A stretch of DNA of 64,000 bases from Styela clava (taxonomy: Eukaryota): positions 8,928,001 to 8,992,000 of the forward strand of contig NC_135250.1 in assembly GCF_964204865.1 (NCBI RefSeq), written 5' to 3'. The position numbers and the translations under genes are program-made. Position 1 is the stretch's first letter; each line of letters opens with the position of its first letter. Positions 1,970-58,851 of this stretch are shown piece by piece. The notes under the pieces were generated by a model, which worked only from the letters and a program-made list of their open reading frames with translations, was not told where the DNA came from and made no database searches.

Positions 1970-4900
1970 ATGGGGATAGCGTGCTGTAAATGCACAAATG
2001 GAGATAATGATGAAACGATTAATAAAAAGAAAAAAATGACGAAAACGCAAAGGCGGCGTTGGTTAAGGCGGAGAAAAACAGATGGAGAGATATTTCAATC
2101 GACTGAACCAACGAGGGAATCGCTAGATGCAGAGAAGCGGGAAACAGGTCGAATCGCTTTTAAAAAGCAGCAGCTTTCGTTGTGAGTAACAATATTAATT
2201 TAATTCGAATAAGTGAATACTTGTTTTTTTTTATAGTTAAACTCAGAATTAAAACGGTTGTTGATATTACAAACATATTTTTTGATGAAATAATTTTGTC
2301 GTTGATAACACCGCCTACTTTTATCAATCTTGTCCTGCTAGGAATCTTGAAGTGAAGTAGTACTTTTCAGTGATACATCCGAAATTAGGATATATTAGCT
2401 TATTGACATGGAGGTACTCCCGAAGTATATTAACCAAGATGGCGGACACCAGAACGTGGTATGTGTACCAGGTTGAGGTTAGGGTGGGGCCATAATTTTA
2501 TTCCAATTTTCCTTATTTTAGTTCTATTATGAGTTTGCGGTCTAGCCAAATGAATCCCGTAATATTTGTACCTGAAATTATGGCTCAACCCTAACCTGCT
2601 ACACATACTACGTTCCGGTATTCGCCATCTTGGTTCACATACTTCGGGAGTACCGACATGAAAATCACTCGAAACGCTTTTTCCCAATAACACTAATCGA
2701 TCAGAAAGTGGTATTTTTGCACGCGCAACATTTAATGATCTGTTATTCAATACATTACATCAAATATAAGTCAATGTGAAAATAATTGTATTTATTTATC
2801 TTCTCCCATTTTTCTCCTGTCCGCATGGCATTTCCATTATTCCCGCACACAGTCAAACCATATTAAGAATAACTTTACTCGAAAAAAAAATTAACGTCCG
2901 TGGACAAATAACTTTATGGATCAATTGACATACATTAAATGGAATGAACATTGGCAACGGTGGCTGCAAAAAGATGATGAATCTTGTAATAACAACAACA
3001 ATTTTATTGAAAAGAAAAAGTGTGAACATTTTTTCATCGTCAGGAACTGCGTTTCGTTCATAACGAACAAAACCTAACCACAATGTAATGATATCACACA
3101 TCATAAACAATTCATGACATTGAGAGATGGAAGCTGACTGCGAATAACATAATCATCTTCATGCGGATTTTTCATTGATTTTATTCTATTAGTATCAGTT
3201 CGATTTGAATATTTTTGTCTTTTATCATTTGTTCAGAAGACGCTGTTTCTGATTTGTCATTTAATTTGAGTTGGTTTATAGAACCAGGCTGAATTTGCTT
3301 TATAGAATAATTGAATTTTTTTATTTTCAGCGGGCTTGTAACATGGCATTTCTTCAGTGAATTTCATTCCTACTGTCAATTGCATACATTTAAAAATATT
3401 TCTAAAAAAAAAACAGTTTGCTAAAAAAAGGTAATATAATATTTCATCATCAACTAGTAGCCCAAGGCATTTTCAACTCATTCGCGTAACGTGGATGGCT
3501 TTAAATAATATGCATATTCACAAAAATGTAATTAGCAATGCATTTTTAGAAATGGAACTTTTGGGAGGAGAAATACCCTGAAGCCTTTGCGAATATACCT
3601 GGGGAATCGTTTACAAGAGTAAGTTTTTACCTGTTTCATTAATTTGCCGTTGCCACGATTCACTTTTCCACAAAACATTATTTTTACAGAACTCAGAGAG
3701 TTTGGGAGACAAAGCTGCTTTGGGCATCGGATTTGAGATCCAATTACACTGCGCTACTTCTACGAGGACTAGTTCTTTCTTCCAGGAGGGTAATGTGTCC
3801 ATTTACTCTTTCGAAATATTCAGAGTATTCACACGTTTAGACGGTTCATATTATATGTAATCTGCTGATACAAATTGAAACTCATCATGTTAAGCTAAGA
3901 TGCATGTCAAGGCATCAAATTGAGTATCTTTTCGTATAAATTAATCCTTATTCCGTATATCGACAGACACGTCATGTTACAAGAGTAAATGGGCTAATGT
4001 CATCAGTCAACGTTGTCAATACCACTAATAAAAAATGCATCGAATCATTTTCCACAAAAGTCTCGAAATTTCAATCAACAGTAAGTATATTGGTTTCTGA
4101 AAACAAAAATTTGTGTCACTATTAGTAGTATTCCATGTAGTTGTTAATATTTTATTATATTTTCAGAATTGTAATCCGATGCAACAATTTGATCCACTGA
4201 GGTAAGCGCTTTATATTTGAAATATTTTTTATCAATAGACATAAACTTTGAAATTCATACCTGAGCAATTTATACAATTAGCCATAAAAAATATTCTGTT
4301 TTATATATCTAGAAATGGGAATTTCACAGGAGTGATCTCCATGAGGAAGACACTCAGAAACTATTTGCAACAGTAAGTTCATGAATTATATTATTAACTT
4401 GGCATTGTTCCTGCAATTTATACTTTAAAACGAGATTAAATTTTCGCAGAACTCGAATGGCGTGGGAACAAAGTTCCTTGTTATGGGCTTCCAACGTCAA
4501 AGTAAACCCAGGTCGTTGTGTGGAGATTGTTCAAAGTATTGTTCGTTTTACTTTTGAGGTAACTTTCAACAGACGTATTTTTATATTCAAGAATATGTTT
4601 ATTTCAGCCTGCTTAGAAATGCGGAATAGGTCGCTATAAATATGTATATTGATTTTTTAACTGGTTCGTGTCCACAGCACACAACACAATGTGAAGAGTT
4701 TTTAGATCTTGGAGAGTAAAATTAACGCTTGCCTTTAAAAATATCGAATAGGTGTGTGAAGCATTTTTACCAAATGGTATCCATCTTCACCTGTTTTTAT
4801 TTAAACAGGCATCTCCGATGTCTCTTAAAGCAGGAAAACTGATTTCGGCCATTCCTATTGGCCATATGAGGTCGGCCAAATTGGCAAATGACGAATCAAA

Positions 4901-7548
4901 AGTAAGTTCGGTCACTAAAAATAAATATAGTATTGACTGACAGTAATTAAGATAAAACACTTCCAGATAGGGGAAATGCAAATTAACATAAAGTTCAGAC
5001 ATGGTTTCTTTATTTTTGTATTTGGTTAAGTGGTATAACGCGTATCCAAACCCCTTTTTTGTACCTTCATCTTAGTGAGTCCCCATGCTAAGCGTGCACG
5101 TATATAAACTACCGCTAAGACTAACTTTTTGAATGCCTATTTTTTAAAATATTCAGCCGAAAAAAGAAATTGTTTCATCTAGCAATTTGACAGATCTTAA
5201 AACATTGGGTTGCAAAAGAGATGAAACGTTAGTTCAGTCAAGGGTAGGTTGATTTTATTATTCGTAATTCGCAAATTTCTGTGTCAACTAAAAACTATAT
5301 ATTTTTTTGTTTTCTGTATTTTAAGAATTATCAGGAGAACAGATTCCATCAAACTATGTATGTATCTTTTTTCATTTGAATAAAATATATATGTTGAAAA
5401 TCCAATATATTATTCACGTTTCTGTTTTATTTCAGGGAAATTGCAAAACTTAAACAACAGAACGAGAGAACGAAAATAAAAATCAAACGACAGATTCAGG
5501 TGATATATCGACGATCATGGCTGACAAATATTTTACTCGAAAATAAAAACGATTAGAAAGTTCATATACAAATATTCAAAGTATAATTAATTAATTAAGC
5601 GCAAACAATAAACCAATTGTCCATATCAAAACAAAAACTGATCAAAATGTGATCGACTTTTAGGAACGACATGAAATGGCGCAGGACAGAAGCCATCGAT
5701 TCACTAATCCGAAGGTCAGTTATATTTATTCTAACACACATACTCTAATCATTCATCAATTTTGGCTGCTTTTTACTATGCTCTGCACTGCTTATTTACT
5801 ATGCTCTAATATTGTAATAGACACTCATGGATTTCATTTTTAGACACCGTGTTTTGTTAACTGCGAGGTTAATAAATCGGCGATTCATAGCAGTCCTACA
5901 AATGTGAGATCTGCTTCAAACGAAGTTAAACGTGAATCAAAAGTAAGTATATTCATCGGATGTATTGTGATAAAAAAAAATTACATTTTATTTCTTTAAT
6001 ATTCAACAATAATTAATGAGTAAAATTTGAGCGAAAAAGGGGATTTTTATGATAATTCCTATTTTTAATCCGTTTCATTTCTTATTTCAAGTGCTTTCCT
6101 GGAGAAAACGACGTCCGGCCACGTCTGTGAGTATAATATCTATTTTTTCATTTATTAATATGATTGAAATTTTGGGTAACGAATTTAAAGTACTTCTCTT
6201 TTTTAAGTGGATTTGTAAGATTCAAGGAAAAGAATAAAAAAAGGATGGAGACAATCAGGAGGCGGAGAGAGGTAAAATAATAACAGAAACATCAAAAAAA
6301 ATTATTTCAAAATTTGAAAAAAATTATTCGAAAAGTTTTTACAAGCTGATATAGAAAATTGCATGTTTTCACTGGAGTGGGAGCAGGATTTGCATTTTCT
6401 AAATTCCCCAGAGTCGAAGTTTTTGTTACAAAAATTCGATTATTCCGGATTTCATAGCTGGAGTGGGAGTCGGTCCTGAAATATGGTCCGAGTCCGGATG
6501 CGTCAGGCGGAGTCGATTTGAATTCTCTCCGGCTCTAAATCCCTGTAAAAGTAAAAAATGATTTCCATCCTTTTAGGAACTCGAAGAAAGAGTTCGGCAG
6601 ATGGATGAAGACCTCAGAATATCCAAAATGAAGGTCTGGTATTTATTTATTTATACTAGATTTTTTTACTTTTTCTCCATTTCAACTTTAAACTTTGGAT
6701 CAATATTTCTATCTTAAGTTTGTATGAAAAATGTCTTATTCTATTTTTGAGTTTAGTGTTTTGATAACTTTTTTGACCAAACTTCATTATGGTTTTATTA
6801 TTGCCATCTAAGCACCTTTTCGAACAGATTTGAAGAATATTATTTGGTAAAGCAATCACTCGCACATTTCATGTTTGACACAGTTAGAATCACGAATATT
6901 CTAAAATCTATTCCGCTTATTTTTTTTTTTAGCTTGAACGATCTAATTCAGGGAATACTGTAAAACATCATCAAACCGAAGTTGGTAAGTATCATAGTCC
7001 ATTTCGCTATGTTAAAATATCAACTCAATTTTATCTGAATATGACGACATTTGTGTTATTTAGATTTATTAGTTTGCCGCAAAATAGAAAGTGTATTTGT
7101 GAGATTTGGTTGGGTCATAGCCCAAGTTCGTGAGACAAAATAAGATATAACTGCTAAGATTAAGATGATAATAATTGCTGAGTCAAGTAATTAGAATGTA
7201 ATAAAAATATGAAGATGGAAGGATTTAGTCTGTCTAATTTTGGTTATGCGCATACGAAGTAGACAAGGAGAAAGGATCTGCAGTTTAACATAATATCCTA
7301 GTACCCAACGTAGTTCAAACTGATGGTTACAAATTAGTATCGTGGAAATTCCATTACGATTTCGATTGGTGCTAATTCTAGCATATTAAAACATATTTAA
7401 AAAGATAAAATTATCATTCGAATCGCATGGGATACAATATTTTATAAAATACTACAAAAATTCAAAAGATCAATATCCCTATCTCATATTTACAGGTGAC
7501 AGCAGAAACAGGGAATGCCGAAACTCCCAGCAATGTTTTCCGCCATAA
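1970..7548 (+). CDS. 18-exon orphan gene, copy 1 (~461 aa; putatively N-acylated, internal repeat plus coiled-coil-like protein)
   Basis: Exons 1970-2181, 3550-3618, 3690-3789, 3967-4080, 4167-4201, 4313-4372, 4450-4558, 4809-4901, 5157-5243, 5326-5357, 5436-5499, 5664-5714, 5844-5942, 6092-6126, 6208-6271, 6577-6633, 6933-6984, 7496-7548. All introns are GT..AG, all phases are compatible, total 1386 nt with no internal stop. Protein MGIACCKC...NGTFGRRNTLKPLRIYLGNRLQETQRVWETKLLWASDL...MEIAKLKQQNERTKIKIKRQIQ...ELEERVRQMDEDLRISKMK...RNSQQCFPP*. Confidence 0.8.
2407..2660. mobile_element. Foldback MITE with long imperfect inverted repeats in intron 1 (copy 1)
   Basis: Left end CATGGAGGTACTCCCGAAGTAT..AACCAAGATGGCG matches the reverse complement of the right end CGCCATCTTGGTT..ATACTTCGGGAGTACCGACATG. 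Inverted similarity extends ~90 bp. No clear TSD. Confidence 0.8.
6370..6545. mobile_element. Remnant of a GGAGT(C/G)-repeat short DNA element in intron 15 (present in all units)
   Basis: GC-rich island with repeated CTGGAGTGGGAG/GGAGTCG motifs ending CTCCGGCTCTAAATCCCTG (hAT-like CCCTG end). Length is polymorphic between units. Confidence 0.4.
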
Positions 7549-7769
7549 CCACTGGGTCACCAATCCACATACATTTGCATATTTGTGTGTCTTGATTTTT
7601 TTATATGCACTTATTTCTCTGTAATTTAGCATAAATATATATATAAACATAATTATCGGATTTGATATCCTTTATTTGGGTGAATTTTTGTAAATGTAAT
7701 AGTTGAATCAGTGTTTTCAGCTGGGTTGCTCGACCTAAAAGGGAAATTGACTTTTGAACTATCGGAAAG

Positions 7770-8235
7770 AACTTGACTACTTTCCTCCTTGACTTCTTCT
7801 CTTTTTTCGCCAAAATGATTTTTTCTGTCTTATTCCACATATTCACACCTTAATTTTTTTGGGGGGCCTCGCCGATTGACCTTATTTATTATATTTTTTA
7901 CTTTAACTTCTCAATGCTTAATTTTTTCATTCCTTTTTTATTCGTAGTGCACACGCATAAACTTTATTTTATCTCACAACTTTCCTTGTCTGTTTTTCTA
8001 GATTACTTTCCTCTTTGGCCAGAATAATTTTTTTTTTCATCTATACTTATTTCAACATTTCCAATCTTAATTTTCTTTGGGGCCTCATTAAACTTTTTTC
8101 TCTACAACTTTGCTTGTCTGTTTTCCTAGACTACTTTCCTCCGTGACTTCTTTTCTCTTTGGCAAGAATGATTTTCTTTTATCTGTACTTATTTCACAAC
8201 ATTTCCAATATTAATTTTCTCTGGGGCCTCGCTTT
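7770..8235 (+). repeat. Degenerate pyrimidine-rich tandem repeat (3 units) downstream of the orphan gene; present in units 1-4
   Basis: GA(C/T)TACTTTCCTC...GGGGCCTC recurs at ~7774, ~8000 and ~8129. Confidence 0.65.
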
Positions 8236-9154
8236 ATTATTTTTTCCGATGAGATCTGCAACTTATTCGAGTATGTCACAGAAAACTGAAAGTTTCAAAG
8301 TGAAATCTATGAACGCAGTTGCTGTCACGGACATAGAATGTGAAACAGTATCAACAATCCATACAAACATTCCAAACGAGAAACATAAACTGTCAAATCA
8401 GTCTAAACGTATGAGCTGCCATTCGAAATATGAACATTTATGCAGAAAAGAACATGATACGGAGGAATACAACTCACTTGAATCAATTAAAGTGAATACA
8501 AAACATTTGATAACTTTGGGATTTCGTTGGAGCAGGTACCACACAACTTTGTCTGCTAACTGTCATTCTGCTTCCTTCCATTAAATATTATGATATCCTA
8601 TAAAAAGATTGAAAAAAAAGCTGATCTCTCAACTCTAGCGGATCACGCGACACAATCATAAGAGTCCGAGACCCTTACATTGTATATATACTATGGACGT
8701 TGTGTAAAAACGCGTTGCGTTATTGTAAACTCAAAATTTTCGGAAACTTGATATATCTTCTGTTTCTAGTTTATTCAATAAATTTAACACGGCCTTCGGA
8801 ATGTGTTCATTAAAACATTTTCAAATATTTTATCTGGTCTTCTCAAAATAGTGTAGCAAAAATTCTATTCTACAGACATTTAGAAATATTTGAATGTATA
8901 TTTTGAAATTATTGTGGTGGTTATTGCTCTACTAGAGGTGCGGTTGACGTGTTGTGGAGTAGCGATTCTTGAAATGGGTGAAGCAGATATGAAAAAGCGA
9001 AAAAAACTCGGATGGGGAGATTCATTCAAGCACATTTCAAAAGATTAAAAATATGGAAACTTGTTTTGGGTATGTGCCAGTTGTAAAACGCCCTCAGAAA
9101 TAGAAGCTCAAAGTTAGGCTGTAAGTGTGAAGTCAATTAAGCTATAGTATAGGG

Positions 9155-10157
9155 CCGGCCTGCCCAACCCTTTTAGTGTCGCGGGCCACTTTCACATAAA
9201 GAATTCATTGCGGGCCACAATCGTTTTTACCAAACTTAAATACCAGCCAAGTTCTGTTTTACGTCGTTTTGTAAAATTCGAATGACCAATACAAGTACCT
9301 AACAAAGCAACGTTTTTAGGATTTCCGAACGAATATATTGAATATGTAGGAATGACATCAAGTCAATATTATCACAATTTTAAACGGATTCGCAGTAACT
9401 AAATTTCAGAATTTTTATTTAACGCAAAATTAGCATGACCACAATAGAAAAATACAAACAGAAGAAAAAAAAACGAATGCCGGACCCAGTAGCAAATATA
9501 TTGTTCACTTTTTTTACGGCGGCGATAAGGAATATCAAAATCGACACGAATAATATGTAATAAGAATGAAATTAATTTCGACAATAGCTTTCGAGTTTGT
9601 CAAACAAAACGCGCAGTTCCGCAAGATATGAAAAACCTAAACATCAAAGTCCACCAGATCGCAAGACGTGATATCTGCGTGATATGGAGAACCGACATTT
9701 GGATAAAGATGGCCGGAATGAACACAGCAAAATCACGAAACATACCTTACTAGCCTATAGAAAATATCTGTATCTGAAATCCCAATTGTCATTCACGGCT
9801 CGTTGGAAAGTGGCGGTTGAATACATTCAATACAACACACTGAAATAGGCAAATCGTTCGTATCACTAATTGAAAGCAATGTCTCGAAAATTGTGATTTC
9901 AAAGCTGACTATGATAAAAAGGAAGTCAAGATATCTCTCCCCGACAATCACGTCCGCAAAGAGACTTGAAAAGTGGCATTTCTCGACCGTTTAAACAAGG
10001 AATAATGTTTTTATGGCATGTGTCAATATTTTCTTAGGTTTGTGGGAGACATCGAGATAAGTTTAGCATACCAAATTCTGGAAAATGCCGCGCGGGCCAC
10101 TCGGAACCCTTCAGTGGGCCAGATGTGGCCCCGCGGGCCATGTGTTGGACGACCCTT
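9155..10157. mobile_element. Non-autonomous hAT (Charlie-like) element, ~1.0 kb, unit 1
   Basis: Ends CCGGCCTGCCCAAC / GTTGGACGACCCTT, clustered subterminal GCGGGCCA motifs at both ends, 8-bp TSD GTATAGGG/GTATAGCG (7/8, central TA). Confidence 0.78.
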
Positions 10158-11503
10158 GTATAGCGTCTCCGCCACGGGCTTAGTCGAAAAAACGAGTTTT
10201 AGAGTCTATTTCGCAACTCAAGACCAAGGGGTTCATACTCGGGCTGTCAGTACAATGTAAATTCATACTACTTGCTGGCGTTTGCAAATTTATGTGCGTA
10301 TAGAAATTTTATATAGAATGACAGGGAGTTTTATATCCTCGAATATCTTTCTCGATTAAAGCATTGTTATTTGCAAAATGTAATGATGTGAAAAAAATAT
10401 TTCCAATCATAAGGCAGTTAAACATGGAGATTCCCGAGATATTTATTGAGATTTCCAGTTTGTTTCGAGTGTTTAAAATCATTACTAAATAATCATACCT
10501 CCCGCGGTGTAGATATATTTTATCAACTTTCTCACTTGCCTTTGCATCTTATTTGATCAACGGAGAATTTTGAAATATCCGAAGCAGCTCACTCGAATTC
10601 ACTGTGATGATTTTGGGAATATTTGTAAGTAATCGTGGCAACGCAACTCGTGTACGACCGATTTCTTGGAGAACTTTTTTATTCATTGGCGCAACTTAAT
10701 TGGATGATTCAGGAAGAGCTGTAACCTTGATTTGACCTTCGAATACTTATAATACACAAATAGTGGCATAAAATTCTCTACTCCGAATTATTTACTGACA
10801 ACGTTTTAAAAAACATCAGTAAATAAATAAATAATAAATAAATAACACCCGCATGTTAAAACAACGTTGTATCTATGCATTCTAAGATGTAACTGTTTGA
10901 ATTACTAGAGATATTTATTAGGGGTCCGTTTAATGAATGTTTCGAATAAATCTTTCCGAATGAATTCATTTACTCATGACAATATTTCTGTTTGGATCAC
11001 TGACCATGACCTTTTGTAACATGGCAACTACCGATTACATAACAATGGTTCAACAATGCCCTTGGCAACCTTGGTATCCATGAGAACCAGAGACAACCAA
11101 TCATGTACCTCTGTACTTTTGCAATTAGTCTTGTAGTCTGTTCTGCCGAGTCTTTACTCGTTCGGTCGAGGGGGTTTAAGTTTCAATCGTACGATGTTTT
11201 CGATAGATGTTTCTGCGTGGCTTGTTATGCTAACCATTTCCTGGTGAGAAATGATAATAATGTTGGGCTATATGTGCCAATGCAATATTACTTCATGGTA
11301 ACGTTATATTCAATGACTCAATCTGACGGATCGAATACCGGTGCAAAATCGAACACCTATTTTCTAATCCGATTTTAATTTTCCGAATTCTGTCCAAATC
11401 CAAGTTTTTATAGTAATCAGACTTAATGAATATGTTATATTTTATAGCCTTGGAATAATACAATCAATTACGTTACATCCCATTCTTGCTAGCCAATTTC
11501 AAT

Positions 11504-14500
11504 ATGGGGATAGCGTGCTGTAAATGCACAGATGGAGATAATGATGAAACGATTAACAAAAAGAGAAAAATGACGAAAACGCAAAGGCGGCGTTGGTTAA
11601 GGCGGAGAAAAACAGATGGAGAGATATTTCAATCGACTGAACCAACGAGGGAATCGCTAGATGCAGAGAAGCGGGAAACAGGTCAAATCGCTTTTAAAAA
11701 GCAGCAGCTTTCGTTGTGAGTAACAATATTAATTTAATTCGAATAAGTGAATACTTTTTTTTATAGTTAAACTCAGAATTAAAACGGTTGTTAATATAAC
11801 AAACATATTTTTTGATGAAATAATTTTGTCGTTGATAACACCGCCCACTTTTATCAATCTTGTCCTGCTAGGAATCTTGAAGTGAAGTAGTACTTTTCAA
11901 TGATACATCCGAAATTAGGATATATGGGTTACCAGCATATTGACATAGAGGTACTCCCGAAGTATAGTAACCAAGATGGCGGACACCGGAACGTGGTATG
12001 TGTACGAGGTTAGGGTTATGCCATAATTTAATTCCAATTTTCCGTATTTTAGTTCTATTATGAGTTTGCGGTCTAGCCAAATGACTCCCGTAATATTTGT
12101 ACCTGAAATTATGGCTCAACCCTGACCTGCTACACATACTACGTTCCGGTATTCGCCATCTTGGTTCACATACTTCGGGAGTACCGACATGAAAATCTCT
12201 CGAAACGCTTTTTCCCAATAACACTAATCGACCAGAAAGTGGTATTTTTGCACGCGCAACATTTAATGATCTGTTATCCAATATATGAAATCAAATATAA
12301 GTCAATGTGGAAATAATTGTATTTATTTATCTTCTCCCATTTTCCTTATGTTCCGCATGACATTTCCAATATTCCGGCACACAGTCCCACCATATAAAGA
12401 TTAACTTTACTCGAAAAAAAAAAATTTATTGTCCGTGGACAAATAACTTTATGGATCAATTGACATACATTAAATGGAATGAACATTGGCAACGATGGCT
12501 GCAAAAAGATGATGAATCTTGTAATTACATCAACAATTATATTGAAAAGAAAAAGTGTAAAGATTTTTCCATCGTCAGGAACTGCGTTTCATTCATAACG
12601 AACAAAACCCAACCACAATCTAATGAAATCACACATCATAAACAATTCATAACATTGGGAGATGGAAGCTGACTGCGAGTAATATATTCTCTTTAGCCGA
12701 TTTTTCATTGATTTTATTCTATTAGTATCAGTTCGATTTGAATATTTTTGTCTTTTACCGTTTGTTCAGAAGACGCTGTTTCTGATTTGTCATTTAATTT
12801 GAGTTGGTTTAGAGAACCAGGCTGAATTTGCTTTATAGAAAAATTGAATTTTCCTATTTTAGCTGGCTTGTAACATTGCATTTATTCAGTGAATTTCATT
12901 CCTACTATCAATTGCATACATTCAAATATATTTCTAAAAAAAAAACAGTTTGCTAAAAAAAGGTAATATAATATTTCATCATCAACTAGTAGTCCAAGGC
13001 ATTTTCAACTCATTCGCGTAACGTGGATGGCTTTAAATAATATGCATATTCACAAATTGTTATTGGCATATGCATTTTTAGAAATGGAACTTTTGGGAGG
13101 AGAAATACCCTGAAGCCTTTGCGAATATACCTGGGGAATCGTTTACATGAGTAAGTTTTTACCTGTTTTATTAATTTGCCGTTGCCACGATTCACTTTTC
13201 CACAAAACGCTATTTTTACAGAACTCAGAGAGTTTGGGAGACAAAGCTGCTTTGGGCATCGGATTTGAGATCCAATTACACTGCGCTACTTCTACGAGGA
13301 CTAGTTCTTTCTTCCAGGAGGGTAATGTGTCCATTTACTCTTTCGAAATATTCAGAGTATTCACACGTTTAGACGGTTCATATTATATGTAATCTGCTGA
13401 TACAAATTGAAACTCATCATGTTAAGCTAAGATGCATGTCAAGGCATCAAATTGAGTATCTTTTCGTATAAATTAATCCTTATTCCGTATATCGACAGAC
13501 ACGTCATGTTACAAGAGTAAATGGGCTAATGTCATCAGTCAACGTTGTCAATACCACTAATAAAAAATGCATCGAATCATTTTCCACAAAAGTCTCGAAA
13601 TTTCAATCAACAGTAAGTATATTGGTTTCTGAAAACAAAAATTTGTGTCCCTATTAGTAGTATTCCATGTAGTTGTTGATATTTTATTATATTTTCAGAA
13701 ATGTAATCCGATGCAACAATTTGATCCACTGAGGTAAGCGCTTTATATTCAAAATATTTTTTATCAATAGACAAACTTTGAAATTCATACCTGAGCAATT
13801 TATACAATCAACCATAAAAAATATTCTGTTATATATATCTAGAAATGGGAATTTCACAGGAGTGATCTCCATGAGGAAGACACTCAGGAACTATTTGAAA
13901 CAGTAAGTTTATGAATTATATTATCAACTTGGCATTGTTGTTGCAATTTATACTTTAAAACGAGATTGATTTTTCGCAGAACTCGAATGACGTGGGAACA
14001 AAGTTCCTTGTTATGGGCTTCCAGCGTCAAAGTAAACCCAGGTCGTTGTATGAAGATTGTTCAAAGTATTGTTCGTTTTACTTTTGAGGTAACTTTTAAC
14101 ACGCGTATTTTATAATCAAGAATATGTTTATTTCAGCCTGCTTATAAAGTGCGGAATAGGTCGCTATAAATATGTATATTGATCTTTTAACTGGCTCGTG
14201 TCCACAGCACACAACACATAGGTGAAGAGTTTTTAGTTCTCGGAAAGTTAATTTAACGTTTGCCTTTCAAAAAAATCGAATAGGTGTGCGAAGCATTTTC
14301 TACCAAACAGTATCCATCTTCACCTATCAAAAAATATTTGCACCAGCATTTTTATTTAAACAGGCATCTCCGATGTCTCTTAAAGCAGGAAAACTGATTT
14401 CGGCCATTCCTATTGGTCATATGAGGTCGGCCAAGTTGGCAAATGACGAATCAAAAGTAAGTTCAGTAACTAAAAATGAATATATATAGTATTAACTGAC

Positions 14501-35900: not shown

Positions 35901-38900
35901 TATACAAGAATACAAAGTATAATTAATTAATTAAGCGCAAACAATAAACCAATTGTTCATATCAAAACAAAAACTGATCAAAATGTGATCGACTTTTAGG
36001 AACGACATGAAATGGCGCAGGACAGAAGCCATCGATTCACTAATCCGAAGGTCAGCTATATTTATTCTAACACACATACTCTAATCATTCATCAATTTTG
36101 GCTGCTTTTTACTATGCTCTGCACTGCTTATTTACTATGCTCTAATATTGTAATAGACACTCATGGATTTCATTTTTAGACACCGTGTTTTGTTAACTGC
36201 GAGGTTAATAAATCGGCGATTCATAGCAGTCCTACAAATGTGAGATCTGCTTCAAACGAAGTTAAACGTGAATCAAAAGTAAGTATATTCATCGGATGTA
36301 TTGTGATAAAAAAAAATTACATTTTATTTCTTTAATATTCAACAATAATTAATGAGTAAAATTTGAGCGAAAAAGGGGATTTTTATGATAATTCCTATTT
36401 TTAATCCGTTTCATTTCTTATTTCAAGTGCTTTCCTGGAGAAAACGACGTCCGGCCACGTCTGTGAGTATAATATCTATTTTTTCATTTATTAATATGAT
36501 TGAAATTTTGGGTAACGAATTTAGAGTACTTCTCTTTTTTAAGTGGATTTGTAAGATTCAAGGAAAAGAATAAAAAAAGGATGGAGACAATCAGGAGGCG
36601 GAGAGAGGTGAAGTAATAACAGAAACATTAAAGAAAATTATTTCAAAATTTGAAAAAAAATATTCGAAAAGTTTTTACAAGCTGATATAGAAAATTGCAT
36701 GTTTTCACTGGAGTGGGAGCAGGATTTGCATTTCCTAAATTCCCCAGAGTAGAAGTTTTTGTTACAAAAATTCGATTATTCCGGATTTCATAGCTGGAGT
36801 GGGAGTCGGTCCTGAAATATGGTCCGAGTCCGGATGCGTCAGGCGGAGTCGATTTGAATTCTCTCCGGCTCTAAATCCCTGTAAAAGTAAAAAATGATTT
36901 CCATCCTTTTAGGAACTCGAAGAAAGAGTTCGGCAGATGGATGAAGACCTCAGAATATCCAAAATGAAGGTCTGGTATTTATTTATTTATACTAGATTTT
37001 TTTACTTTTTCTCCATTTCAACTTTAAACTTTGGATCAATATTTCTATCTTAAGTTTGTATGAAAAATGTCTTATTCTATTTTTGAGTTTAGTGTTTTGA
37101 TAACTTTTTTGACCAAACTTCATTATGGTTTTATTATTGCCATCTAAGCACCTTTTCGAACAGATTTGAAGAATATTATTTGGTAAAGCAATCACTCGCA
37201 CATTTCATGTTTGACACAGTTAGAATCACGAATATTCTAAAATCTATTCCGCTTATTTTTTTTTTTAGCTTGAACGATCTAATTCAGAGAATACTGTAAA
37301 ACATCATCAAACCGAAGTTGGTAAGTATCATAATCCATTTCGCTATGTTAAAATATCAACCCAATTTCATCTGAATATGACGACATTTGTGGTATTTAGA
37401 TTTATTAGTTTGCCGCAAAATAGAAAGTGTATTTGTGAGATTTGGTTGGGTCATAGCCCAAGTTCGTGAGACAAAATAAGATATAACTGCTAAGATTAAG
37501 ATTATAATAATTGCTGAGTCAAGTAATTAGAATGTAATAAAAATATGAAGATGGAAGGATTTAGTCTGTCTAATTTTGGTTATGCGCATACGAAGTAGAC
37601 AAGGAGAAAGGATCTGCAGTTTAACATAATATCCTAGTACCCAACGTAGTTCAAACTGATGGTTACAAATTAGTATCGTGGAAATTCCATTACGAAGTCG
37701 ATAGGTGCTTTTCTAGAATATTAAAACATATTTAAAAAGATAAAATCATCATTCGACTCGCATGGGATACAATATTTTATAAAATACTACAAAAATGTAA
37801 AAGATCAATATCCCTATCTCATATTTACAGGTGACAGCAGAAACAGGGAATGCCGAAACTCCCAGCAATGTTTTCCGCCATAACCACTGGGTCACCAATC
37901 CACATACATTTGCATATTTGTGTGTCTTGATTTTTTTATATGCACTTATTTCTCTGTATTTTAGCATAAATATATATATAAACATAATTATCGGATTTGA
38001 TATCCTTTATTTGGGTGAATTTTTGTAAATGTAATAGTTGAATCAGTGTTTTCAGCTGGGTTGCTCGACCTAAAAGGGAAATTGACTTTTGAACTATCGG
38101 AAAGAACTTGACTACTTTCCTCCTTGACTTCTTCTCTTTTTTCGCCAAAATGATTTTTTCTGTCTTATTCCACATATTCACACCTTAATTTTTTTGGGGG
38201 GCCTCGCCGATTGACCTTATTTATTATATTTTTTACTTTAACTTCTCAATGCTTAATTTTTTCATTCCTTTTTTATTCGTAGTGCACACGCATAAACTTT
38301 ATTTTATCTCTACAACTTTCCTTGTCTGTTTTTCTAGATTACTTTCCTCTTTGGCCAGAATAATTTTTTTTTTCATCTATACTTATTTCAACATTTCCAA
38401 TCTTAATTTTCTTTGGGGCCTCATTAAACTTTTTTCTCTGCAACTTTGCTTGTCTGTTTTCCTAGACTACTTTCCTCCGTGACTTCTTTTCTCTTTGGCA
38501 AGAATGATTTTCTTTTATCTGTACTTATTTCACAACATTTCCAATATTAATTTTCTCTGGGGCCTCGCTTTATTATTTTTTCCGATGAGATCTGCAACTT
38601 ATTTGAGTATGTCACAGAAAACTGAAAGTTTCAAAGTGGAATCTATGAACGCAGTTGCTGTCACGGACATAGAATGTGAAACAGTATCAACAATCCATAC
38701 AAACATTCCAAACGAGACACATAAACTGTCAAATCAGTCTAAACGTATGAGCTGCCATTCGAAATAGGAACATTTATGCAGAAAAGAACATGATACGGAG
38801 GAATACAACTCACTTGAATCAATTAATGTTGAATACAAAACATTTGATAACTTTGGGATTTCGTTGGAGCAGGTACCACACAACTTTGTCTGCTAACTGT

Positions 38901-39491
38901 CATTCTGCTTCATTCCATTAAATATTATGATATCCTATAAAAAGATTGAAAAAAAAGCTGATCTCTCAACTCTAGCGGATCACGCGACACAATCATAAGA
39001 GTCCGAGACCCTTACATTGTATATATACTATGGACGTTGTGTAAAAACGCGTTGCGTTATTGTAAACTCAAAATTTTCGGAAACTTGATATATCTTCTGT
39101 TTCTAGTTTATTCAATAAATTTAACACGGCCTTCGGAATGTGTTCATTAAAACATTTTCAAATATTTTATCTGGTCTTCTCAAAATAGTTTAGCAAAAAT
39201 TCTATTCTACAGACATTTAGAAATATTTGAATGTATATTTTGAAATTATTGTGGTGGTTATTGCTCTACTAGAGGTGCGGTTGACGTGTTGTGGAGTAGC
39301 GATTCTTGAAATGGGTGAAGCAGATATGAAAAAGCGAAAAAAACTCGGATGGGGAGATTCATTCAAGCACATTTCAAAAGATTAAAAATATGAAAACTTG
39401 TTTTGGGTATGTGCCAGTTGTAAAACGCCCTCAGAAATAGAAGCTCAAAGTTAGGCTGTTAGTGAGAAGTCAATTAAGCTATAGTATAGGG

Positions 39492-40493
39492 CCGGCCTGC
39501 CCAACCCTTTTAGTGTCGCGGGCCACTTTCACATAAAGAATTCATTGCGGGCCACAATCGTTTTTACCAAACTTAAATACCAGCCAAGTTCTGTTTTACG
39601 TCGTTTTGTAAAATTCGAATGACCAATACAAGTACCTAACAAAGCAACGTTTTTAGGATTTCCGAACGAATATATTGAATATGTAGGAATGACATCAAGT
39701 CAATATTATCACAATTTCAAACGGATTCGCAGTAACTAAATTTCAGAATTTTTATTTAACGCAAAATGAGCATGACCACAATAGAAAAATACAAACAGAA
39801 GAAAAAAAAACGAATGCCGGACCCAGTAGCAAATATATTGTTCACTTTTTTTACGGCGGCGATAAGGAATATCAAAATCGACACGAATAATATGTAATAA
39901 GAATGAAATTAATTTCGACAATAGCTTTCGAGTTTGTCAAACAAAACGCGCAGTTCCGCAAGATATGAAAAACCTAAACAACAAAGTCCACCAGATCGCA
40001 AGACGTGATATCTGTGTGATATGGAGAACCGACAGTTGGATAAAGATGGCCGGAATGAACACAGCAAAATCACGAAACATACCTTACTAGCCTATAGAAA
40101 ATATCTGTATCTGAAATCCCAATTGTCATTCACGGCTCGTTGGAAAGTGGTGGTTGAATACATTCAATACAACACACTGGAATAGGCAAATCGTTCGTAT
40201 CACTAATTGAAACGATGTCTCGAAAATTGTGATTTCAAAGCTGACTATGATAAAAAGGAAGTCCAGATATCTCTCCCCGACAATCACGTCCGCAAAGAGA
40301 CTTGAAAAGTGGCATTTCTCGACCGTTTAAACAAGGAATAATGTTTTTATGGCATGTGTCAATATTTTCTTAGGTTTGTGGGAGACATCGAGATAAGTTT
40401 AGCATACCAAATTCTGGAAAATGCCGCGCGGGCCACTCGGAACCCTTCAGTGGGCCAGATGTGGCCCCGCGGGCCAGGTGTTGGACGACCCTT
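39492..40493. mobile_element. Same hAT element, unit 4
   Basis: Same ends and TSD. Confidence 0.78.
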
Positions 40494-41839
40494 GTATAGC
40501 GTCTCCGCCACGGGCTTAGTCGAAAAAACGAGTTTTAGAGTCTATTTCGCAACTCAAGACCAAGGGGTTCATACTCGGGCTGTCAGTACAATGTAAATTC
40601 ATACTACTTGCTGGCGTTTGCAAATTTGTGTGCGTATAGAAATTTTATACAGAATGACAGGGAGTTTTATATCCTCGAATATCTTTCTCGATTAAAGCAT
40701 TGTTATTTGCAAAATGTAATGATGTGAAAAAAATATTTCCAATCATAGGCAGTTAAACATGGAGATTCCCGAGATATTTATTGAGATTTCCAGTTTGTTT
40801 CGAGTGTTTAAAATCATTACTAAATAATCATACCTCCCGCGGTGTAGATATATTTTATCAACTTTCTCACTTGCCTTTGCATCTTATTTGATCAACGGAG
40901 AATTTTGAAATATCCGAAGCAGCTCACTCGAATTCACTGTGATGATTTTGGGAATATTTGTAAGTAAACGTGGCAACGCAACTCGTGTACGACCGATTTC
41001 TTGGAGAACTATTTTATTCATTGGCGCAACTTAATTGGATGATTCAGGAAGAGCTGTAACCTTGATTTGACCTTCGAATACTTATAATACACAAATAGTG
41101 GCATAAAATTCTCTACTCCGAATTATTTACTGACAACGTTTTAAAAAACATCAGTAAATAAATAAATAATAAATAAATAACACCCGCATGTTAAAACAAC
41201 GTTGTATCTATGCATTCTAAGATGTAACTGTTTGAATTACTAGAGATATTTATTAAGGGTCCGTTTAATGAATGTTTCGAATAAATCTTTCCGAATGAAT
41301 TCATTTACTCATGACAATATTTCTGTTTGGATCACTGACCATGACCTTTTGTAACATGGCAACTACCGATTACATAACAATGGTTAAACAATGCCCTTGG
41401 CAACCTTGGTATCCATGAGAACCAGAGACAACCAATCATGTACCTCTGTACTTTTGCAATTAGTCTTGTAGTCTGTTCTGCCGAGTCTTTACTCGTTCGG
41501 TCGAGGGGGTTTAAGTTTCAATCGTAAGATGTTTTCGATAGATGTTTCTGCGTGGCTTGTTATGCTAAGCCATTTCCTGGTGAGAAATGATAATAATGTT
41601 GGGCTATATGTGCCAATGCAATATTACTTCATGGTAACGTTATATTTAATGACTCAATCTGACGGATCGAATACCGGTGCAAAATCGAACACCTATTGTC
41701 TAATCCGATTTTAATTTTCCGAATTCTGTCCAAATCCAAGTTTTTATAGTAATCAGACTTAATCAATATGTTATATTTTATAGCCTTGGAATAATACAAT
41801 CAATTACGTTACATCCCATTCTTGCTAGCCAATTTCAAT

Positions 41840-44800
41840 ATGGGGATAGCGTGCTGTAAATGCACAGATGGAGATAATGATGAAACGATTAACAAAAAGA
41901 GAAAAATGACGAAAACGCAAAGGCGGCGTTGGTTAAGGCGTAGAAAAACAGATGGAGAGATATTTCAATCGACTGAACCAACGAGGGAATCGCTAGATTC
42001 AGAGAAGCGGGAAACAGGTCAAATCGCTTTTAAAAAGCAGCAGCTTTCGTTGTGAGTAACAATATTAATTTAATTAATATTGTAATAAGTGAATACTTTT
42101 TTTTATAGTTAAACTCAGAATTAAAACGGTTGTTAATATAACAAACATATTTTTTGATGAAATAATTTTGTCGTTGATAACACCGCCCACTTTTATCAAT
42201 TTTGTCCTGCTAGGAATCTTGAAGTGAAGTAGTACTTTTCAATGATACATCCGAAATTAGGATATATATCGATTAGGATAAAATCTCTCGAAACGCTTTT
42301 TCCCAATAACACTAATCGACCAGAAAGTGGTATTTTTGCACGCGCAACATTTAATGATCTGTTATCCAATATATGAAATCAAATATAAGTCAATGTGAAA
42401 ATAATTGTATTTATTTATCTTCTCCCATTTTCCTTATGTTCCGCATGACATTACCAATATTCCGGCACACAGTCCCATCATATTAAGATTAACTTTACTC
42501 GGAAAAAAAATATTATTGTCTGTGGACGAAGAACTTTATGAATCAATTGACATGCATTAAATGGAATGAACATTGGTAACGATGGCTGCAAAAAGATGAT
42601 GAATCTTGTATTAACAACAACAAATAAATTGAAAAGAAAAAGTGTGAAGATTTTTCTGTGGTCAGGAACTGCGTTTCGTTCATAACGAACAAAACCCAAC
42701 CACAATGTAATGATATCACACATCATAAACAATTCATAACATTAAGAGATAGAAGCTGACTGCGAGTAACATATTCATCTTTAGCCGATTTTTCATTTAT
42801 TTTATTCTATTAGTATCAGTTCGATTTGAATATTTTTGTCTTTTACCATTTCTTCAGAAGACGCTGTTTCTGATTTGTCATTCAATTTAAGTTGGTTTAT
42901 ACTTCAGTCTGAATTTGCTTTACAGAAAAATTGAAATTTTCCTATTTTAGCGGGCTTGTAAAATGGCATTTCTTTAGTGAATTTCATTCCTACTATCAAT
43001 TGCATACATTTAAAAATATTTAAAAAAAAAACAGTTTGCTAAAAAAAGGTAATATAATATTTCATCATCAACTAGTAGCCGAAGGCATTTTCAACTCATT
43101 CGCGTAACGTGGATGGCTTTAAATAGTATGCATATTTACAAATTGTAATTGGCATATGCATTTTTAGAAATGGAACTTTTGGGAGGAGAAATCCCCTGAA
43201 GCCTTTGCGAATATACCTGGGGAATCGTTTACAAGAGTAAGTTTTTACCTGTTTCATTAATTTGCCGTTGCCACGATTCACTTTTCCACAAAACGCTATT
43301 TTTACAGAACTCAGAGAGTTTGGGAGACAAAGCTGCTTTGGGCATCGGATTTGAGATCCAATTACACTGCGCTACTTCTACGAGGACTAGTTCTTTCTTC
43401 CAGGAGGGTAATGTGTCCATTTACTCTTTCGAAATATTCACAGTATTCACACGTTTGGACGGTTCATATTATATGTAATCTGCTGATACAAATTGAAACT
43501 CATCCTGTTAAGACAAGATGCATGTCAAGGCATCAAATTGAGTATCTTTTCGTATAAATTAATCCTTATTCGGTATATTGACAGACACGTCATGTTACAA
43601 GAGTAAATGGGCTAATGTCATCAGTCAACGTTGTCAATACCACTAATAAAAAATGCATCGAATCATTTTCCACAAGAGTCTCGAAATTTCAATCAACAGT
43701 AAGTATATTGGTTTCTGAAAACAAAAATTTTGGTCACTATTAGTAGTATTCCATGTAGTTGTTAATATTTTATTATATTTTCAGAATTGTAATCCGATGA
43801 AACAATTTGATCCACTGAGGTAAGCGCTTCATATTTAAAATATTTTTTATCAATAGACATAAACTTTGAAATTCATACCTGAGCAATTTATACAATTAGC
43901 CATAAAAAATATTCTGTTTTATATATCTAGAAATGGGAATTTCACAGGAGTGATCTCCATGAGGAAGACACTCAGAAACTATTTGCAACAGTAAGTTCAT
44001 GAATTATATTATTAACTTGGCATTGTTCTTGCAATTTATACTTTAAAACGAGATTAATTTTTCGCAGATCTCGAATGGCGTGGGAACAAAGTTCCTTGTT
44101 ATGGGCTTCCAACGTCAAAGTAAACCCAGGTCGTTGTGTGGAGATTGTTCAAAGTATTGTTCGTTTTACTTTTGAGGTAACTTTCAACAGACGTATTTTT
44201 ATAATCAAGAATATGTTTATTTCAGCCTGCTTAGAAATGCGGAATAGGTCGCTATAAATAGGTATATTGATTTTTTAACTGGTTCGTGTCCACAGCACAC
44301 AACACAATGTGAAGAGTTTTTAGTTCTTGGAGAGTAAAATTAACGCTTGCCTTTAAAAATATCGAATAGGTGTGTGAAGCATTTTTACCAAATGGTATCC
44401 ATCTTCACCTGTTTTTATTTAAACAGGCATCTCCGATGTCTCTTAAAGCAGGAAAACTGATTTCGGCCATTCCTATTGGCCATATGAGGTCGGCCAAATT
44501 GGCAAATGACGAATCAAAAGTAAGTTCGGTAACTAAAAATAAATATAGTATTCACTGACAGTAATTAAGATAAAACACTTCCAGATAGGGGAAATGCAAA
44601 TTAACATAAAGTTCAGACATGGTTTCTTTATTTTTGTATTTGGTTAATTGGTATAACGCGTATCCAAACCCCTTTTTTGTACCTTCATCTTAGTGAGTCC
44701 CCATGCTAAGCGTGCACGTATATAAACTACCGCTAAGATTTACTTTTTGAATGCTTATTTTTTAAAATATTCAGCCGAAAAAAGAAATTGTTTCATCTAG

Positions 44801-47185
44801 CAATTTGACAGATCTTAAAACATTGGGTTGCAAAAGAGATGAAACGTTAGTTCAGTCAAGGGTAGGTTGATTTTATTATTCGTAATTCGCAAATTTCTGT
44901 GTCAACTAAAAACTATATATTTTTTTGTTTTCTGTATTTTAAGAATTATCAGGAGAACAGATTCCATCAAACTATGTATGTATCTTTTTTCATTTGAATA
45001 AAATATATATGTTAAAAATCCAATATATTATTCACGTTTCTGTTTTATTTCAGGGAAATTGCAAAACTTAAACAACAGAACGAGAGAACGAAAATAAAAA
45101 TCAAACGACAGATTCAGGTGATATATCGACGATCATGGCTGACAAATATTTTACTCGAAAATAAAAACGATTGGAAAGTTCATATACAAATATTCAAAGT
45201 ATAATTAATTAATTAAGCGCAAACAATAAACCAATTGTTCATATCAAAACAAAAACTGATCAAAATGTGATCGACTTTTAGGAACGACATGAAATGGCGC
45301 AGGACAGAAGCCATCGATTCACTAATCCGAAGGTCAGTTATATTTATTCTAACACACATACTCTAATCATTCATCAATTTTGGCTGCTTTTTACTATGCT
45401 CTGCACTGCTTATTTACTATGCTCTAATATTGTAATAGACACTCATGGATTTCATTTTTAGACACCGTGTTTTGTTAACTGCGAGGTTAATAAATCGGCG
45501 ATTCATAGCAGTCCTACAAATGTGAGATCTGCTTCAAACGAAGTTAAACGTGAATCAAAAGTAAGTATATTCATCGGATGTATTGTGATAAAAAAAAATT
45601 ACATTTTATTTCTTTAATATTCAACAATAATTAATGAGTAAAATTTGAGCGAAAAAGGGGATTTTTATGATAATTCCTATTTTTAATCCGTTTCATTTCT
45701 TATTTCAAGTGCTTTCCTGGAGAAAACGACGTCCGGCCACGTCTGTGAGTATAATATCTATTTTTTCATTTATTAATATGATTGAAATTTTGGGTAACGA
45801 ATTTAAAGTACTTCTCTTTTTTAAGTGGATTTGTAAGATTCAAGGAAAAGAATAAAAAAAGGATGGAGACAATCAGGAGGCGGAGAGAGGTAAAGTAATA
45901 ACAGAAACATTAAAGAAAATTATTTCAAAATTTGAAAAAAAATATTCGAAAAGTTTTTACAAGCTGATATAGAAAATTGCATGTTTTCACTGGAGTGGGA
46001 GCAGGATTTGCATTTTCTAAATTCCCCAGAGTCGAAGTTTTTGTTACAAAAATTCGATTATTCCGGATTTCGTAGCTGGAGTGGGAGTCGGGAATCGAAT
46101 CGTAGTCGGTCCTGAAATATGGTCCGAGTCCGGATGCGTCAGGCGGAGTCGATTTGAATTCTCTCCGGCTCTAAATCCCTGTGAAAATGAAAAATGACTC
46201 CCATCCTTTTAGGAACTCGAAGAAAGAGTTCGGCAGATGGATGAAGACATCAGAATATTTAAAATGAAGGTCTGGTATTTATTTATACTAGGTTTTTATA
46301 CTTTTTCTCCATTTCGAGTTTAAATTTCGGATCAATATTTCTATGTTAAGTTTGTATGAAATATGTCTTATCCTATTTTTGAGTTTAGTGTTTCGATAAC
46401 TTTTTTGACCAAACTTTATTATGATTTTATTATTGCCATCTATGCACCTTTTCGAACAGATTTGAAGAATATTATTTAGTAAAGCAATCACTCGCACATT
46501 TCACAGTTAGAGTTACGAATATTCTAGAATCTATTCCGCTTATTTTTTTAGCTTGAACGATCTAATTCAGGAAATACCGTAAAACATCATCAAACCGATA
46601 TTGGTAAGTATCATAGTCCATTTCGCTATGGTAAAATTTCTACTCAATTTTATCTAAATATAACGACATTTGTGTTATCTAGAATTTTAAGAATCTAAGA
46701 ATAACATAATTTTTTTGCGAAATAGGAAGTGTTTTTGTGAGCTTTCGTTAGGCATAGTCTAACTTCGCGAGAAAAAATAATATATAACTGAGAAGATGAA
46801 GTTTATAATAATTGCTGAGTCAAGTAATGAGAATGTAATAAAAATATGAAGATGGAAGGATTTAGTCTGTCTAATTTTGGTTATGCGCATACGAAGTAAA
46901 CAAGGAGAAAAGATCTGCAGTTTAACATAATATCCTAGTACCCAACGTAGTTCAAACTGATGGTTACAAATTAGTATCGTGGAAATTCCATTACGAAGTC
47001 GATAGGTGCTAATTCTAGCATATTAAAACATATTTAAAAATATAAAATCATCATTCGACTCGCATGGGATACAATATTTTATAAAATACTACAAAAATTC
47101 AAAAGATCAATATCCCTATCTCATATTTACAGGTGACAGCAGAAACAGGGAATGCCGAAACTCCCAGCAATGTTTTCCGCCATAA
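41840..47185 (+). CDS. 18-exon orphan gene, copy 5 (apparently intact, most diverged 3' end)
   Basis: Same exon chain with splice sites retained. Exons 16-17 read ELEERVRQMDEDIRIFKMK / LERSNSGNTVKHHQTDI. Stop TAA at 47183-47185. Confidence 0.77.
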
Positions 47186-49160: not shown

Positions 49161-49169
49161 TAGCATCTG

Positions 49170-58814: not shown

Positions 58815-58851
<37 letters not shown>

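What the first reader, a model, noticed from the sequence alone, without database searches (positions are those of the whole stretch)
1970..47185. A hidden 18-exon orphan gene amplified five times in tandem
Seen: none of the listed ORFs captures this gene, but 18 short exons (32-212 nt) with GT-AG boundaries join into one 461-codon frame with compatible phases at all 17 junctions. In the four intact copies every indel I found lies in an intron. I recognise no known domain. Inference: a lineage-specific gene family in recent copy-number expansion (birth-and-death evolution), a pattern typical of reproduction, recognition or immune genes. This is the best candidate for an undescribed system in the window.
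Basis: partly seen in the sequence, partly recalled or inferred. Interest (0 to 1): 0.88.

Follow-up and report, generated by a model that had tools for sequence, protein, structure and literature searches.

The report
Annotated orphan gene in tandem array
The 18-exon, 461-codon gene repeated five times is real, but NCBI already lists it as five "uncharacterized protein" genes of the sea squirt Styela clava, with no known relatives, domain or tested function.

Summary
Window 1369-47379 is a tandem array of about 9.5-kb units: four full and one cut short. Each unit starts a gene at MGIACCKC (1970, 11504, 21062, 30340, 41840).

There are 18 exons of 32-212 nt, GT-AG at all 17 introns, and 461 codons plus stop. 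The frame is intact in copies 1, 2, 3 and 5. Copy 4 is broken by a 1954-bp TTAA-flanked insertion in exon 1 and a GT>GG donor after exon 7.

The gene is not hidden. The model translates exactly to RefSeq predictions for Styela clava: LOC144425848, LOC120341105, LOC144428024, LOC144425600 and LOC144425609. All are named "uncharacterized protein".

Orphan status holds at the sensitivity available. I found no Pfam, PDB or Atlas match and no relative outside this species. Elsewhere in the genome there are only pseudogene fragments.

Exons vary less than introns (2.9% against 7.0%), and only 1 of 42 indel events touches an exon. dN/dS between copies is 0.55-0.98 in nine of ten pairs, so it cannot be told from neutral.

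The protein has a myristoylation/palmitoylation-type N-terminus, a polybasic tract and net charge +46. It has an old internal repeat and long helices, but no signal peptide or membrane span. This suggests an intracellular membrane-anchored protein, not a secreted recognition molecule. Expression could not be tested. Other notes of this scan cover parts of this same window; nothing was found on other DNA.

The parts
1369..47379 (+). Tandem array: four full units and one truncated unit of about 9.5 kb
   Evidence: Self-BLAST blocks at 94-99% identity; k-mer offsets of 9250-11500 and their multiples; only these five copies in the 377-Mb genome.
1970..7548 (+). Copy 1 gene, intact. RefSeq LOC144425848 isoform X1, 461 aa (P0005); isoform X2 (P0004, 324 aa) starts at 3997. 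Exons: 1970-2181, 3550-3618, 3690-3789, 3967-4080, 4167-4201, 4313-4372, 4450-4558, 4809-4901, 5157-5243, 5326-5357, 5436-5499, 5664-5714, 5844-5942, 6092-6126, 6208-6271, 6577-6633, 6933-6984, 7496-7548
   Evidence: Exact spliced match of P0005 and P0004 to the window; phases, GT-AG and absence of stops.
11504..17105 (+). Copy 2 gene, intact. RefSeq LOC120341105, 461 aa (P0003), 18 exons
   Evidence: Exact spliced match.
21062..26384 (+). Copy 3 gene. The DNA holds the full 461-codon frame; RefSeq LOC144428024 (P0007, 439 aa) starts at Met23 (21128)
30340..37883 (+). Copy 4 gene, disrupted. RefSeq LOC144425600 (P0001, 397 aa, 17 exons) starts at 32364 after the insertion, uses a shortened exon 6 (34668-34710) and skips exon 7
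30393..32346 (.). 1954-bp insertion in exon 1 of copy 4, flanked by duplicated TTAA (30389-30392 and 32347-32350). The ends are imperfectly inverted (CTCTTTGAAC / GTTCAAGCGG). It has no ORF of 90 aa or more, so it looks like a non-autonomous piggyBac-type element. It separates MGIACCKC...ETI from the rest of exon 1
   Evidence: Sequence read; alignment gap; ORF list.
34897..34898 (+). Lost splice donor (GG instead of GT) after exon 7 of copy 4
41840..47185 (+). Copy 5 gene. The DNA holds the full 18-exon, 461-codon frame; RefSeq LOC144425609 (P0006, 370 aa) uses another first exon and skips exon 6. Its 3' end is the most diverged (90-94% identity), and the unit ends about 190 nt after the stop
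1970..2080 (+). N-terminal lipid-anchor-type motif MGIACCKC followed by a polybasic tract (KKKKMTKTQRRRWLRRRK)
   Evidence: Translation. It fits the PROSITE PS00008 pattern G-{EDRKHPFYW}-x(2)-[STAGCN]-{P}, which I checked by eye from my own knowledge. MG[IL]ACCK plus a basic cluster is kept in diverged exon-1-like copies 122-127 kb upstream.
3550..4558 (+). Internal repeat: exon pair 2-3 (69+100 nt) and exon pair 6-7 (60+109 nt). Both total 169 nt with the same phases, and each encodes a module of about 56 aa
   Evidence: Local alignment score 65 against a shuffle mean of 22.4 (sd 4.4, z 9.6, 0 of 2000 shuffles reach it). Only residual DNA similarity remains.
2413..2654 (.). Palindromic MITE-like dispersed repeat in intron 1. 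Present in copies 1, 2 and 4; absent from copies 3 and 5
   Evidence: Dozens of genome copies match on both strands; alignment gaps in copies 3 and 5.

Best explanation
Shown: the array holds five copies of one real, spliced, protein-coding gene of the ascidian Styela clava. NCBI's annotation pipeline has already predicted it as five 'uncharacterized protein' loci. Four copies keep the full 18-exon, 461-codon frame. One is a dying copy, hit by a TTAA-element insertion in exon 1 and the loss of one splice donor. No domain or relative is detectable outside this species. Copies exchange sequence, so the array is young and still recombining: copies 3 and 5 are 100% identical over 2023-3549, and copies 2 and 4 over 6461-10900. 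The edge copy and scattered fragments are decaying.

Inferred: the product is an intracellular protein held on the inner face of a membrane by N-terminal myristate (Gly2) and palmitate (Cys5, Cys6, Cys8), helped by a polybasic tract. The rest is a very basic (net +46), mostly helical chain. It has two copies of a module of about 56 aa and two long charged helices (residues 288-336 and 388-433) that may pair as a coiled coil. I take it for a membrane-anchored scaffold or adaptor whose partners are unknown. The amplification most likely reflects dosage or neutral unequal crossing-over, not diversification.
For: Identity with RefSeq: a phmmer search with exon 1 found P0001. P0005, P0003, P0007, P0001 and P0004 map exactly onto the window.

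Intact frames and GT-AG in copies 1, 2, 3 and 5.

Constraint on the reading frame: variable sites are 40 of 1386 in exons against 272 of 3871 in introns (odds ratio 0.39, p = 2.7e-9). One of 42 indel events touches an exon (P = 9e-5).

Old protein-level internal repeat with matching exon phases but diverged DNA. This argues that the frame has been translated for much longer than the array has existed.

MG[IL]ACCK plus a basic cluster is conserved in 39-47%-identical exon-1-like copies upstream.

No hydrophobic span, and 94 K+R against 48 D+E.

AlphaFold2 helices at 288-336 and 388-433 have block pLDDT of 62-93.

Mosaic identity blocks. Broken copy 4. Pseudogene fragments.
Against: XP_ records are computational models.

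dN/dS between copies is 0.55-0.98 in nine of ten pairs and 1.96 for copies 1 and 4. There are 10 synonymous and 28 non-synonymous variable codons, and 78% non-synonymous is expected under neutrality. So amino-acid-level constraint is not demonstrated.

The AlphaFold2 model is poor overall (mean pLDDT 47.9).

Three of the five RefSeq models (copies 3, 4 and 5) do not include the MGIACCKC start.

Lipidation, localisation and coiled-coil pairing are untested.
Confidence: 0.72

Rival explanations
1. The copies are transcribed but functionless. They would be a recently amplified open frame drifting neutrally towards pseudogenes, intact only because the array is young and homogenised by gene conversion.
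For: dN/dS cannot be told from 1. There are no relatives and no domain. The structure prediction has low confidence. One copy is already broken and fragments lie elsewhere. The number of expected nonsense changes is small, so their absence is not significant (my estimate from 40 variable exon sites).
Against: Indels avoid exons (1 of 42, P = 9e-5), and exons vary 0.4 times as much as introns. All 34 splice dinucleotides are kept in four copies. The internal repeat is conserved as protein but not as DNA. The lipid-anchor motif is conserved in diverged upstream copies.
Confidence: 0.15
2. One reading: a fast-evolving reproduction, recognition or immune gene family whose expansion is driven by diversifying selection.
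For: The tandem expansion, species restriction and high dN/dS are the usual marks of such families. The neighbourhood holds candidate immune genes according to unchecked notes of this scan and a weak Mab-21 hint downstream.
Against: There is no signal peptide or membrane span, and the N-terminus is an intracellular anchor type. So the protein is not a secreted or surface recognition molecule. Codons 275-414 are identical in all five copies, the opposite of diversification. No expression data are available.
Confidence: 0.1
3. The copy number is an assembly artefact, with haplotypes or reads mis-stacked into a tandem array.
For: Multi-kb blocks are 100% identical between copies. An older RefSeq product (P0008) is a mosaic that matches no present copy.
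Against: The copies differ by a MITE, a 1954-bp insertion, a 22-bp indel, an 18-bp indel and 1-8% substitutions, in a consistent mosaic within one 32.7-Mb contig. Haplotigs are usually separate contigs.
Confidence: 0.03

Closest known systems
RefSeq Gnomon models of Styela clava: LOC144425848 (XP_077971706.1, XP_077971710.1), LOC120341105 (XP_077971039.1), LOC144428024 (XP_077972793.1), LOC144425600 (XP_077971052.1), LOC144425609 (XP_077971061.1)
   Same: They are the same genes.
   Different: Nothing differs for copies 1 and 2. RefSeq starts copy 3 at Met23 and gives copy 5 another first exon and no exon 6, although the DNA of both keeps the full frame.
SH4-type N-terminal dual-acylation anchors (Src-family kinases such as Lck and Fyn; GAP-43/BASP1/MARCKS-type membrane effector regions). 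This comparison rests on my own knowledge.
   Same: Met-Gly start fitting the myristoylation consensus, nearby cysteines for palmitate, and an adjacent polybasic tract. It would work like these anchors.
   Different: There is no SH3, SH2 or kinase domain, nor any other Pfam domain, and no sequence relation. It is a resemblance of motif only, not membership.
Species-restricted, tandemly duplicated gene families of ascidians (547 families exclusive to S. clava; Hsp70 tandem expansion; PMC7540406)
   Same: A lineage-restricted family expanded in tandem in the same genome.
   Different: That paper does not mention this family. A full-text search for LOC120341105 found no paper.

Membership tests
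RefSeq LOC144425848 / LOC120341105 gene family (Styela clava uncharacterized protein) | The product translates exactly from the window with canonical introns | tested here: met
   P0005, P0003, P0007, P0001 and P0004 map exactly with 15-18 exons. P0006 (copy 5) and the old P0008 did not map exactly with my aligner.
N-myristoylated, palmitoylated (SH4-type) membrane anchor | Initiator Met followed by Gly, fitting G-{EDRKHPFYW}-x(2)-[STAGCN]-{P} | tested here: met
   MGIACCKC in all five copies. The pattern is recalled from PROSITE PS00008 and was checked by eye.
N-myristoylated, palmitoylated (SH4-type) membrane anchor | Cysteine(s) within a few residues of Gly2, and/or a polybasic cluster | tested here: met
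   Cys5, Cys6 and Cys8, and 12 K/R within residues 19-36. Both are conserved in upstream diverged copies.
N-myristoylated, palmitoylated (SH4-type) membrane anchor | Lipid actually attached; membrane localisation | not testable with these tools
   Needs metabolic labelling and imaging.
Src-family kinase or any other Pfam family | Recognisable domain above Pfam's threshold | tested here: not met
   The best hits are DivIC at E 2.5-4.5 and ANG-1 at E 0.35, far below the cut-offs. No PDB sequence match at E up to 10.
Secreted or surface recognition / immune receptor families | Signal peptide or transmembrane span | tested here: not met
   The highest 19-residue Kyte-Doolittle mean is 0.79. The N-terminus is polar after MGIACC.
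Coiled-coil proteins | Long helix with heptad hydrophobic spacing that pairs with itself | tested here: inconclusive
   Helices 288-336 and 388-433 are confident in AlphaFold2. I read a 3-4 spacing of M400, I403, L410, V414, M417, L421 and L428 by eye. The self-pairing job gave no verdict.
piggyBac-type (TTAA-specific) transposon, for the insertion in copy 4 | TTAA target duplication and terminal inverted repeats | tested here: met
   TTAA on both sides, with ends matching 8 of 10 in inverted order. No transposase ORF, so it is non-autonomous. The canonical CCC...GGG ends were not seen.

The most novel reading that the evidence does not exclude
A Styela-specific family of lipid-anchored, extremely basic helical proteins that arose recently, possibly by exon-pair duplication plus capture of a lipid-anchor first exon shared with a neighbouring cluster. 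Its copy number would still be changing in the species under selection, for instance as an adaptor in innate immune or gamete membrane signalling.
Probability: 0.1. Interest if true: 0.5.

Novelty: new member of a known kind. Interest (0 to 1): 0.2.

Why it matters
The finding shows that a reader working from sequence alone rebuilt a correct 18-exon gene. As biology it is modest. It is one more species-restricted, tandemly duplicated gene of unknown function in an ascidian genome that has hundreds of such families, and it is already in the public annotation.

It could serve as a compact case of array dynamics. The array shows block duplication, gene conversion, transposon knock-out of one copy and decay of the edge copy. 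It could also serve as a test of whether an orphan protein with a textbook lipid anchor is functional.

Tried and rejected

My own exon-chaining program on copy 1 alone found 17 of the 18 true exons exactly, and exon 3 with an acceptor 7 nt off. It also added 8 false exons, four of which fail in other copies. I rejected it as a gene finder and used it only as a strand control.

All whole-protein searches used the public proteins P0001 and P0005 by id. Exons were searched by reference.

Searches that gave nothing:
- Pfam on three family products and on eight ORFs of the spacer and flank.
- PDB sequences.
- ESM Atlas, with no usable hit.
- Three word-indexed protein searches, one whole-length and two by region.
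- A full-text paper search for LOC120341105.

P0002 (986 aa, E 3.6e-5, 28% identity) is a repetitive basic protein. I take it for a composition match.

Complex prediction on two copies of residues 380-445 gave no verdict (score 0.08). It is not evidence either way.

I did not run fold search, because the model's mean pLDDT of 47.9 would give meaningless matches.

Codon-position counts of variable sites were 17/13/16 on my earlier, slightly larger exon set. They show no third-position excess.
Full report
**What is there.** The window is G000:C1:8928001-8992000 of a 377-Mb eukaryotic genome. Public protein names identify the organism as the ascidian Styela clava.

K-mer offsets and self-BLAST show a head-to-tail array from about 1369 to 47379. 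The unit is about 9.5 kb, with 94-99% identity between units. The first 24 bases of the proposed coding sequence occur exactly five times, at 1970, 11504, 21062, 30340 and 41840. The fourth unit is longer because of a 1958-column insertion. The fifth unit stops at the point that corresponds to 7728 in copy 1. The rest of the genome holds no further full copy.

**The gene model.** Exon 1 reads from the ATG at 1970 to 2181 (212 nt), followed by GTGAGT. I first tried to rebuild the model blind, with a dynamic program that chains GT-AG exons in frame on copy 1 alone. It scored 98 on this strand, 33 on the reverse complement and 17-53 on other parts of the window. So the strand carries far more well-flanked, frame-compatible exons than chance gives. 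The best chain, however, had 26 exons. Four of the extra exons fail in other copies. A chain with 'compatible phases' is therefore not enough on its own.

The decisive result came from a phmmer search of 1.84 billion representative proteins with exon 1, given by reference. It found a 397-aa protein, 98% identical over residues 23-70. This protein and its cluster mates are RefSeq models of Styela clava, all named 'uncharacterized protein':
- LOC144425848, isoforms X1 (461 aa) and X2 (324 aa)
- LOC120341105 (461 aa)
- LOC144428024 (439 aa)
- LOC144425600 (397 aa)
- LOC144425609 (370 aa)
- an older 262-aa version of LOC120341105

An exact spliced aligner places these proteins on copies 1, 2, 3 and 4. 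The 461-aa products use 18 exons of 32-212 nt. Projected onto every copy, the model gives 1386 nt, no internal stop and AG/GT at all junctions in copies 1, 2, 3 and 5.

**State of the copies.**
- Copy 4 carries a 1954-bp insertion (30393-32346) between duplicated TTAA, with imperfect inverted ends and no long ORF. It looks like a non-autonomous piggyBac-type element. It cuts the first 19 codons, which hold the lipid-anchor motif, from the rest of exon 1.
- Copy 4 has also lost the donor after exon 7, GT to GG. RefSeq's 397-aa product for this copy starts after the insertion and skips exon 7.
- Copy 5 is the edge copy. Its last kilobase is only 90-94% identical to the others, and the unit ends about 190 nt after the stop.
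- RefSeq gives copies 3 and 5 shorter products, although their DNA keeps the full frame.

**History of the array.** Identity is mosaic. Copies 3 and 5 are 100% identical over 2023-3549, and both lack a MITE in intron 1 that copies 1, 2 and 4 have. Copies 2 and 4 are 100% identical over 6461-10900. In 3550-4800, copies 2 and 3 group together against copies 1, 4 and 5. A 13.8-kb block (11547-25342) matches 32341-46091.

This fits a two-unit block duplication followed by gene conversion or unequal exchange. Fragments with stop codons lie at C1:8.80 Mb (exon 1, part of intron 1, exons 2-3) and at C8:23.88 Mb (exon 5 and exons 12-18, at 76% identity over exons and introns alike). Birth-and-death is a fair description.

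**Is the frame under constraint?** Between start and stop, 40 of 1386 exon columns vary among the five copies, against 272 of 3871 intron columns (odds ratio 0.39, p = 2.7e-9). Of 42 indel events, only the transposon insertion touches an exon (P of at most one = 9e-5). An earlier run on my slightly larger exon set, restricted to 3550 onward, gave 3.1% against 6.0% (p = 5e-5).

Within exons, however, there are 10 synonymous and 28 non-synonymous variable codons. Pairwise dN/dS is 0.55-0.98 in nine of ten pairs and 1.96 for copies 1 and 4, where only eight differences were counted. With so few changes this cannot be told from neutrality. Codons 275-414 are identical in all copies along with their introns, which points to homogenisation rather than selection.

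Independent support for long-term coding comes from an internal repeat. Exon pair 2-3 (69+100 nt) and exon pair 6-7 (60+109 nt) have the same total length and phases. They encode similar modules of about 56 aa (score 65 against a shuffle mean of 22.4, z 9.6), while the DNA keeps only traces of similarity.

**What the protein looks like.** There is no Pfam domain, no PDB sequence match, no Atlas look-alike and no relative outside S. clava in three further database searches.

The N-terminus MGIACCKC fits the myristoylation consensus, with cysteines placed for palmitoylation. A tract with 12 basic residues out of 18 follows (the consensus is from my own knowledge). Diverged exon-1-like sequences 122-127 kb upstream keep MGLACCK and a basic cluster while the rest differs.

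The whole protein has 94 K+R against 48 D+E, 12 cysteines and no hydrophobic span. AlphaFold2 without an alignment is poor overall (mean pLDDT 47.9), but it gives two confident long helices at 288-336 and 388-433. By eye, the second helix has 3-4 hydrophobic spacing. A self-pairing prediction gave no verdict.

My reading is an intracellular, lipid-anchored, very basic helical protein that acts as a membrane-associated scaffold or adaptor. That mechanism is inference. Only the motifs are shown.

'Lineage-specific gene family in recent expansion' holds. 'Hidden' and 'undescribed' do not hold for the gene itself. The reproduction, recognition or immune guess has no support, and the architecture argues against a secreted or surface molecule. 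Species-restricted families are numerous in this genome: 547 are exclusive among five ascidians (PMC7540406).

**Limits.** XP_ records are predictions. I made no search with a protein joined from my own exons. Whole-length searches used the public proteins by id. The N run at 54186-54353 was left alone.

**Verdict.** The biology is ordinary and the gene is already annotated, and its function remains unknown. Interest is low to moderate.

Noticed in passing
G000:C1:8801247-8806388 (minus strand; L015 and L013), 122-127 kb upstream of the window: Cluster of six exon-1-like segments starting MGLACCK(P/A)V(A/S)DAGDE... with a basic tract, several with stop codons. There is also a closer broken copy of this gene's exon 1 (MGVAS*KCTNDEN...), a piece of intron 1 and exons 2-3. 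It may be a decayed sister array, or the source of the lipid-anchor exon.
   Followed up: partly
G000:C8:23883429-23885555 (minus strand; L006, L014, L016): Partial copy of the gene (exon 5 and exons 12-18 with their introns) at about 76% identity, with stop codons in exon equivalents. It is a pseudogene fragment on another chromosome.
   Followed up: partly
window 49657-52475 and 54845-59537: A second, older duplication (79-85% identity) downstream of the array. An ORF at 49831-50166 (minus strand) gives a sub-threshold Mab-21 C-terminal domain hit (E 8.6e-4, 19.8 bits against a cut-off of 24.1). These are possibly two Mab-21/cGAS-like genes.
   Followed up: no
window 47700-49200: GC-rich island (48.6% GC against about 34% elsewhere) just after the array. 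It has strong C and T excess on the + strand, a 103-bp unit repeated twice (48703-48909) and long low-complexity ORFs. It is mostly unique in the genome, apart from a dispersed repeat of about 200 bp at 49105-49325.
   Followed up: partly
window 62560-62853 (+): ORF with a weak Cupin_8 (JmjC-like) N-terminal hit (E 0.02). It is probably the first exon of a neighbouring gene.
   Followed up: no
protein P0008 (XP_039265482.1, older RefSeq product of LOC120341105): Its sequence mixes variants that now belong to different copies: copy-1/5-type at the start, copy-2-type SSSDLTALK and a copy-5-type C-terminus. It matches no copy of this assembly exactly. This hints at a collapsed earlier assembly, or at differently recombined arrays in other individuals.
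   Followed up: partly
window 2413-2654 and equivalents in copies 2 and 4: Palindromic MITE of about 240 bp with dozens of copies at 85-89% identity across the genome. Its presence or absence among array copies is a useful marker of the duplication order.
   Followed up: partly
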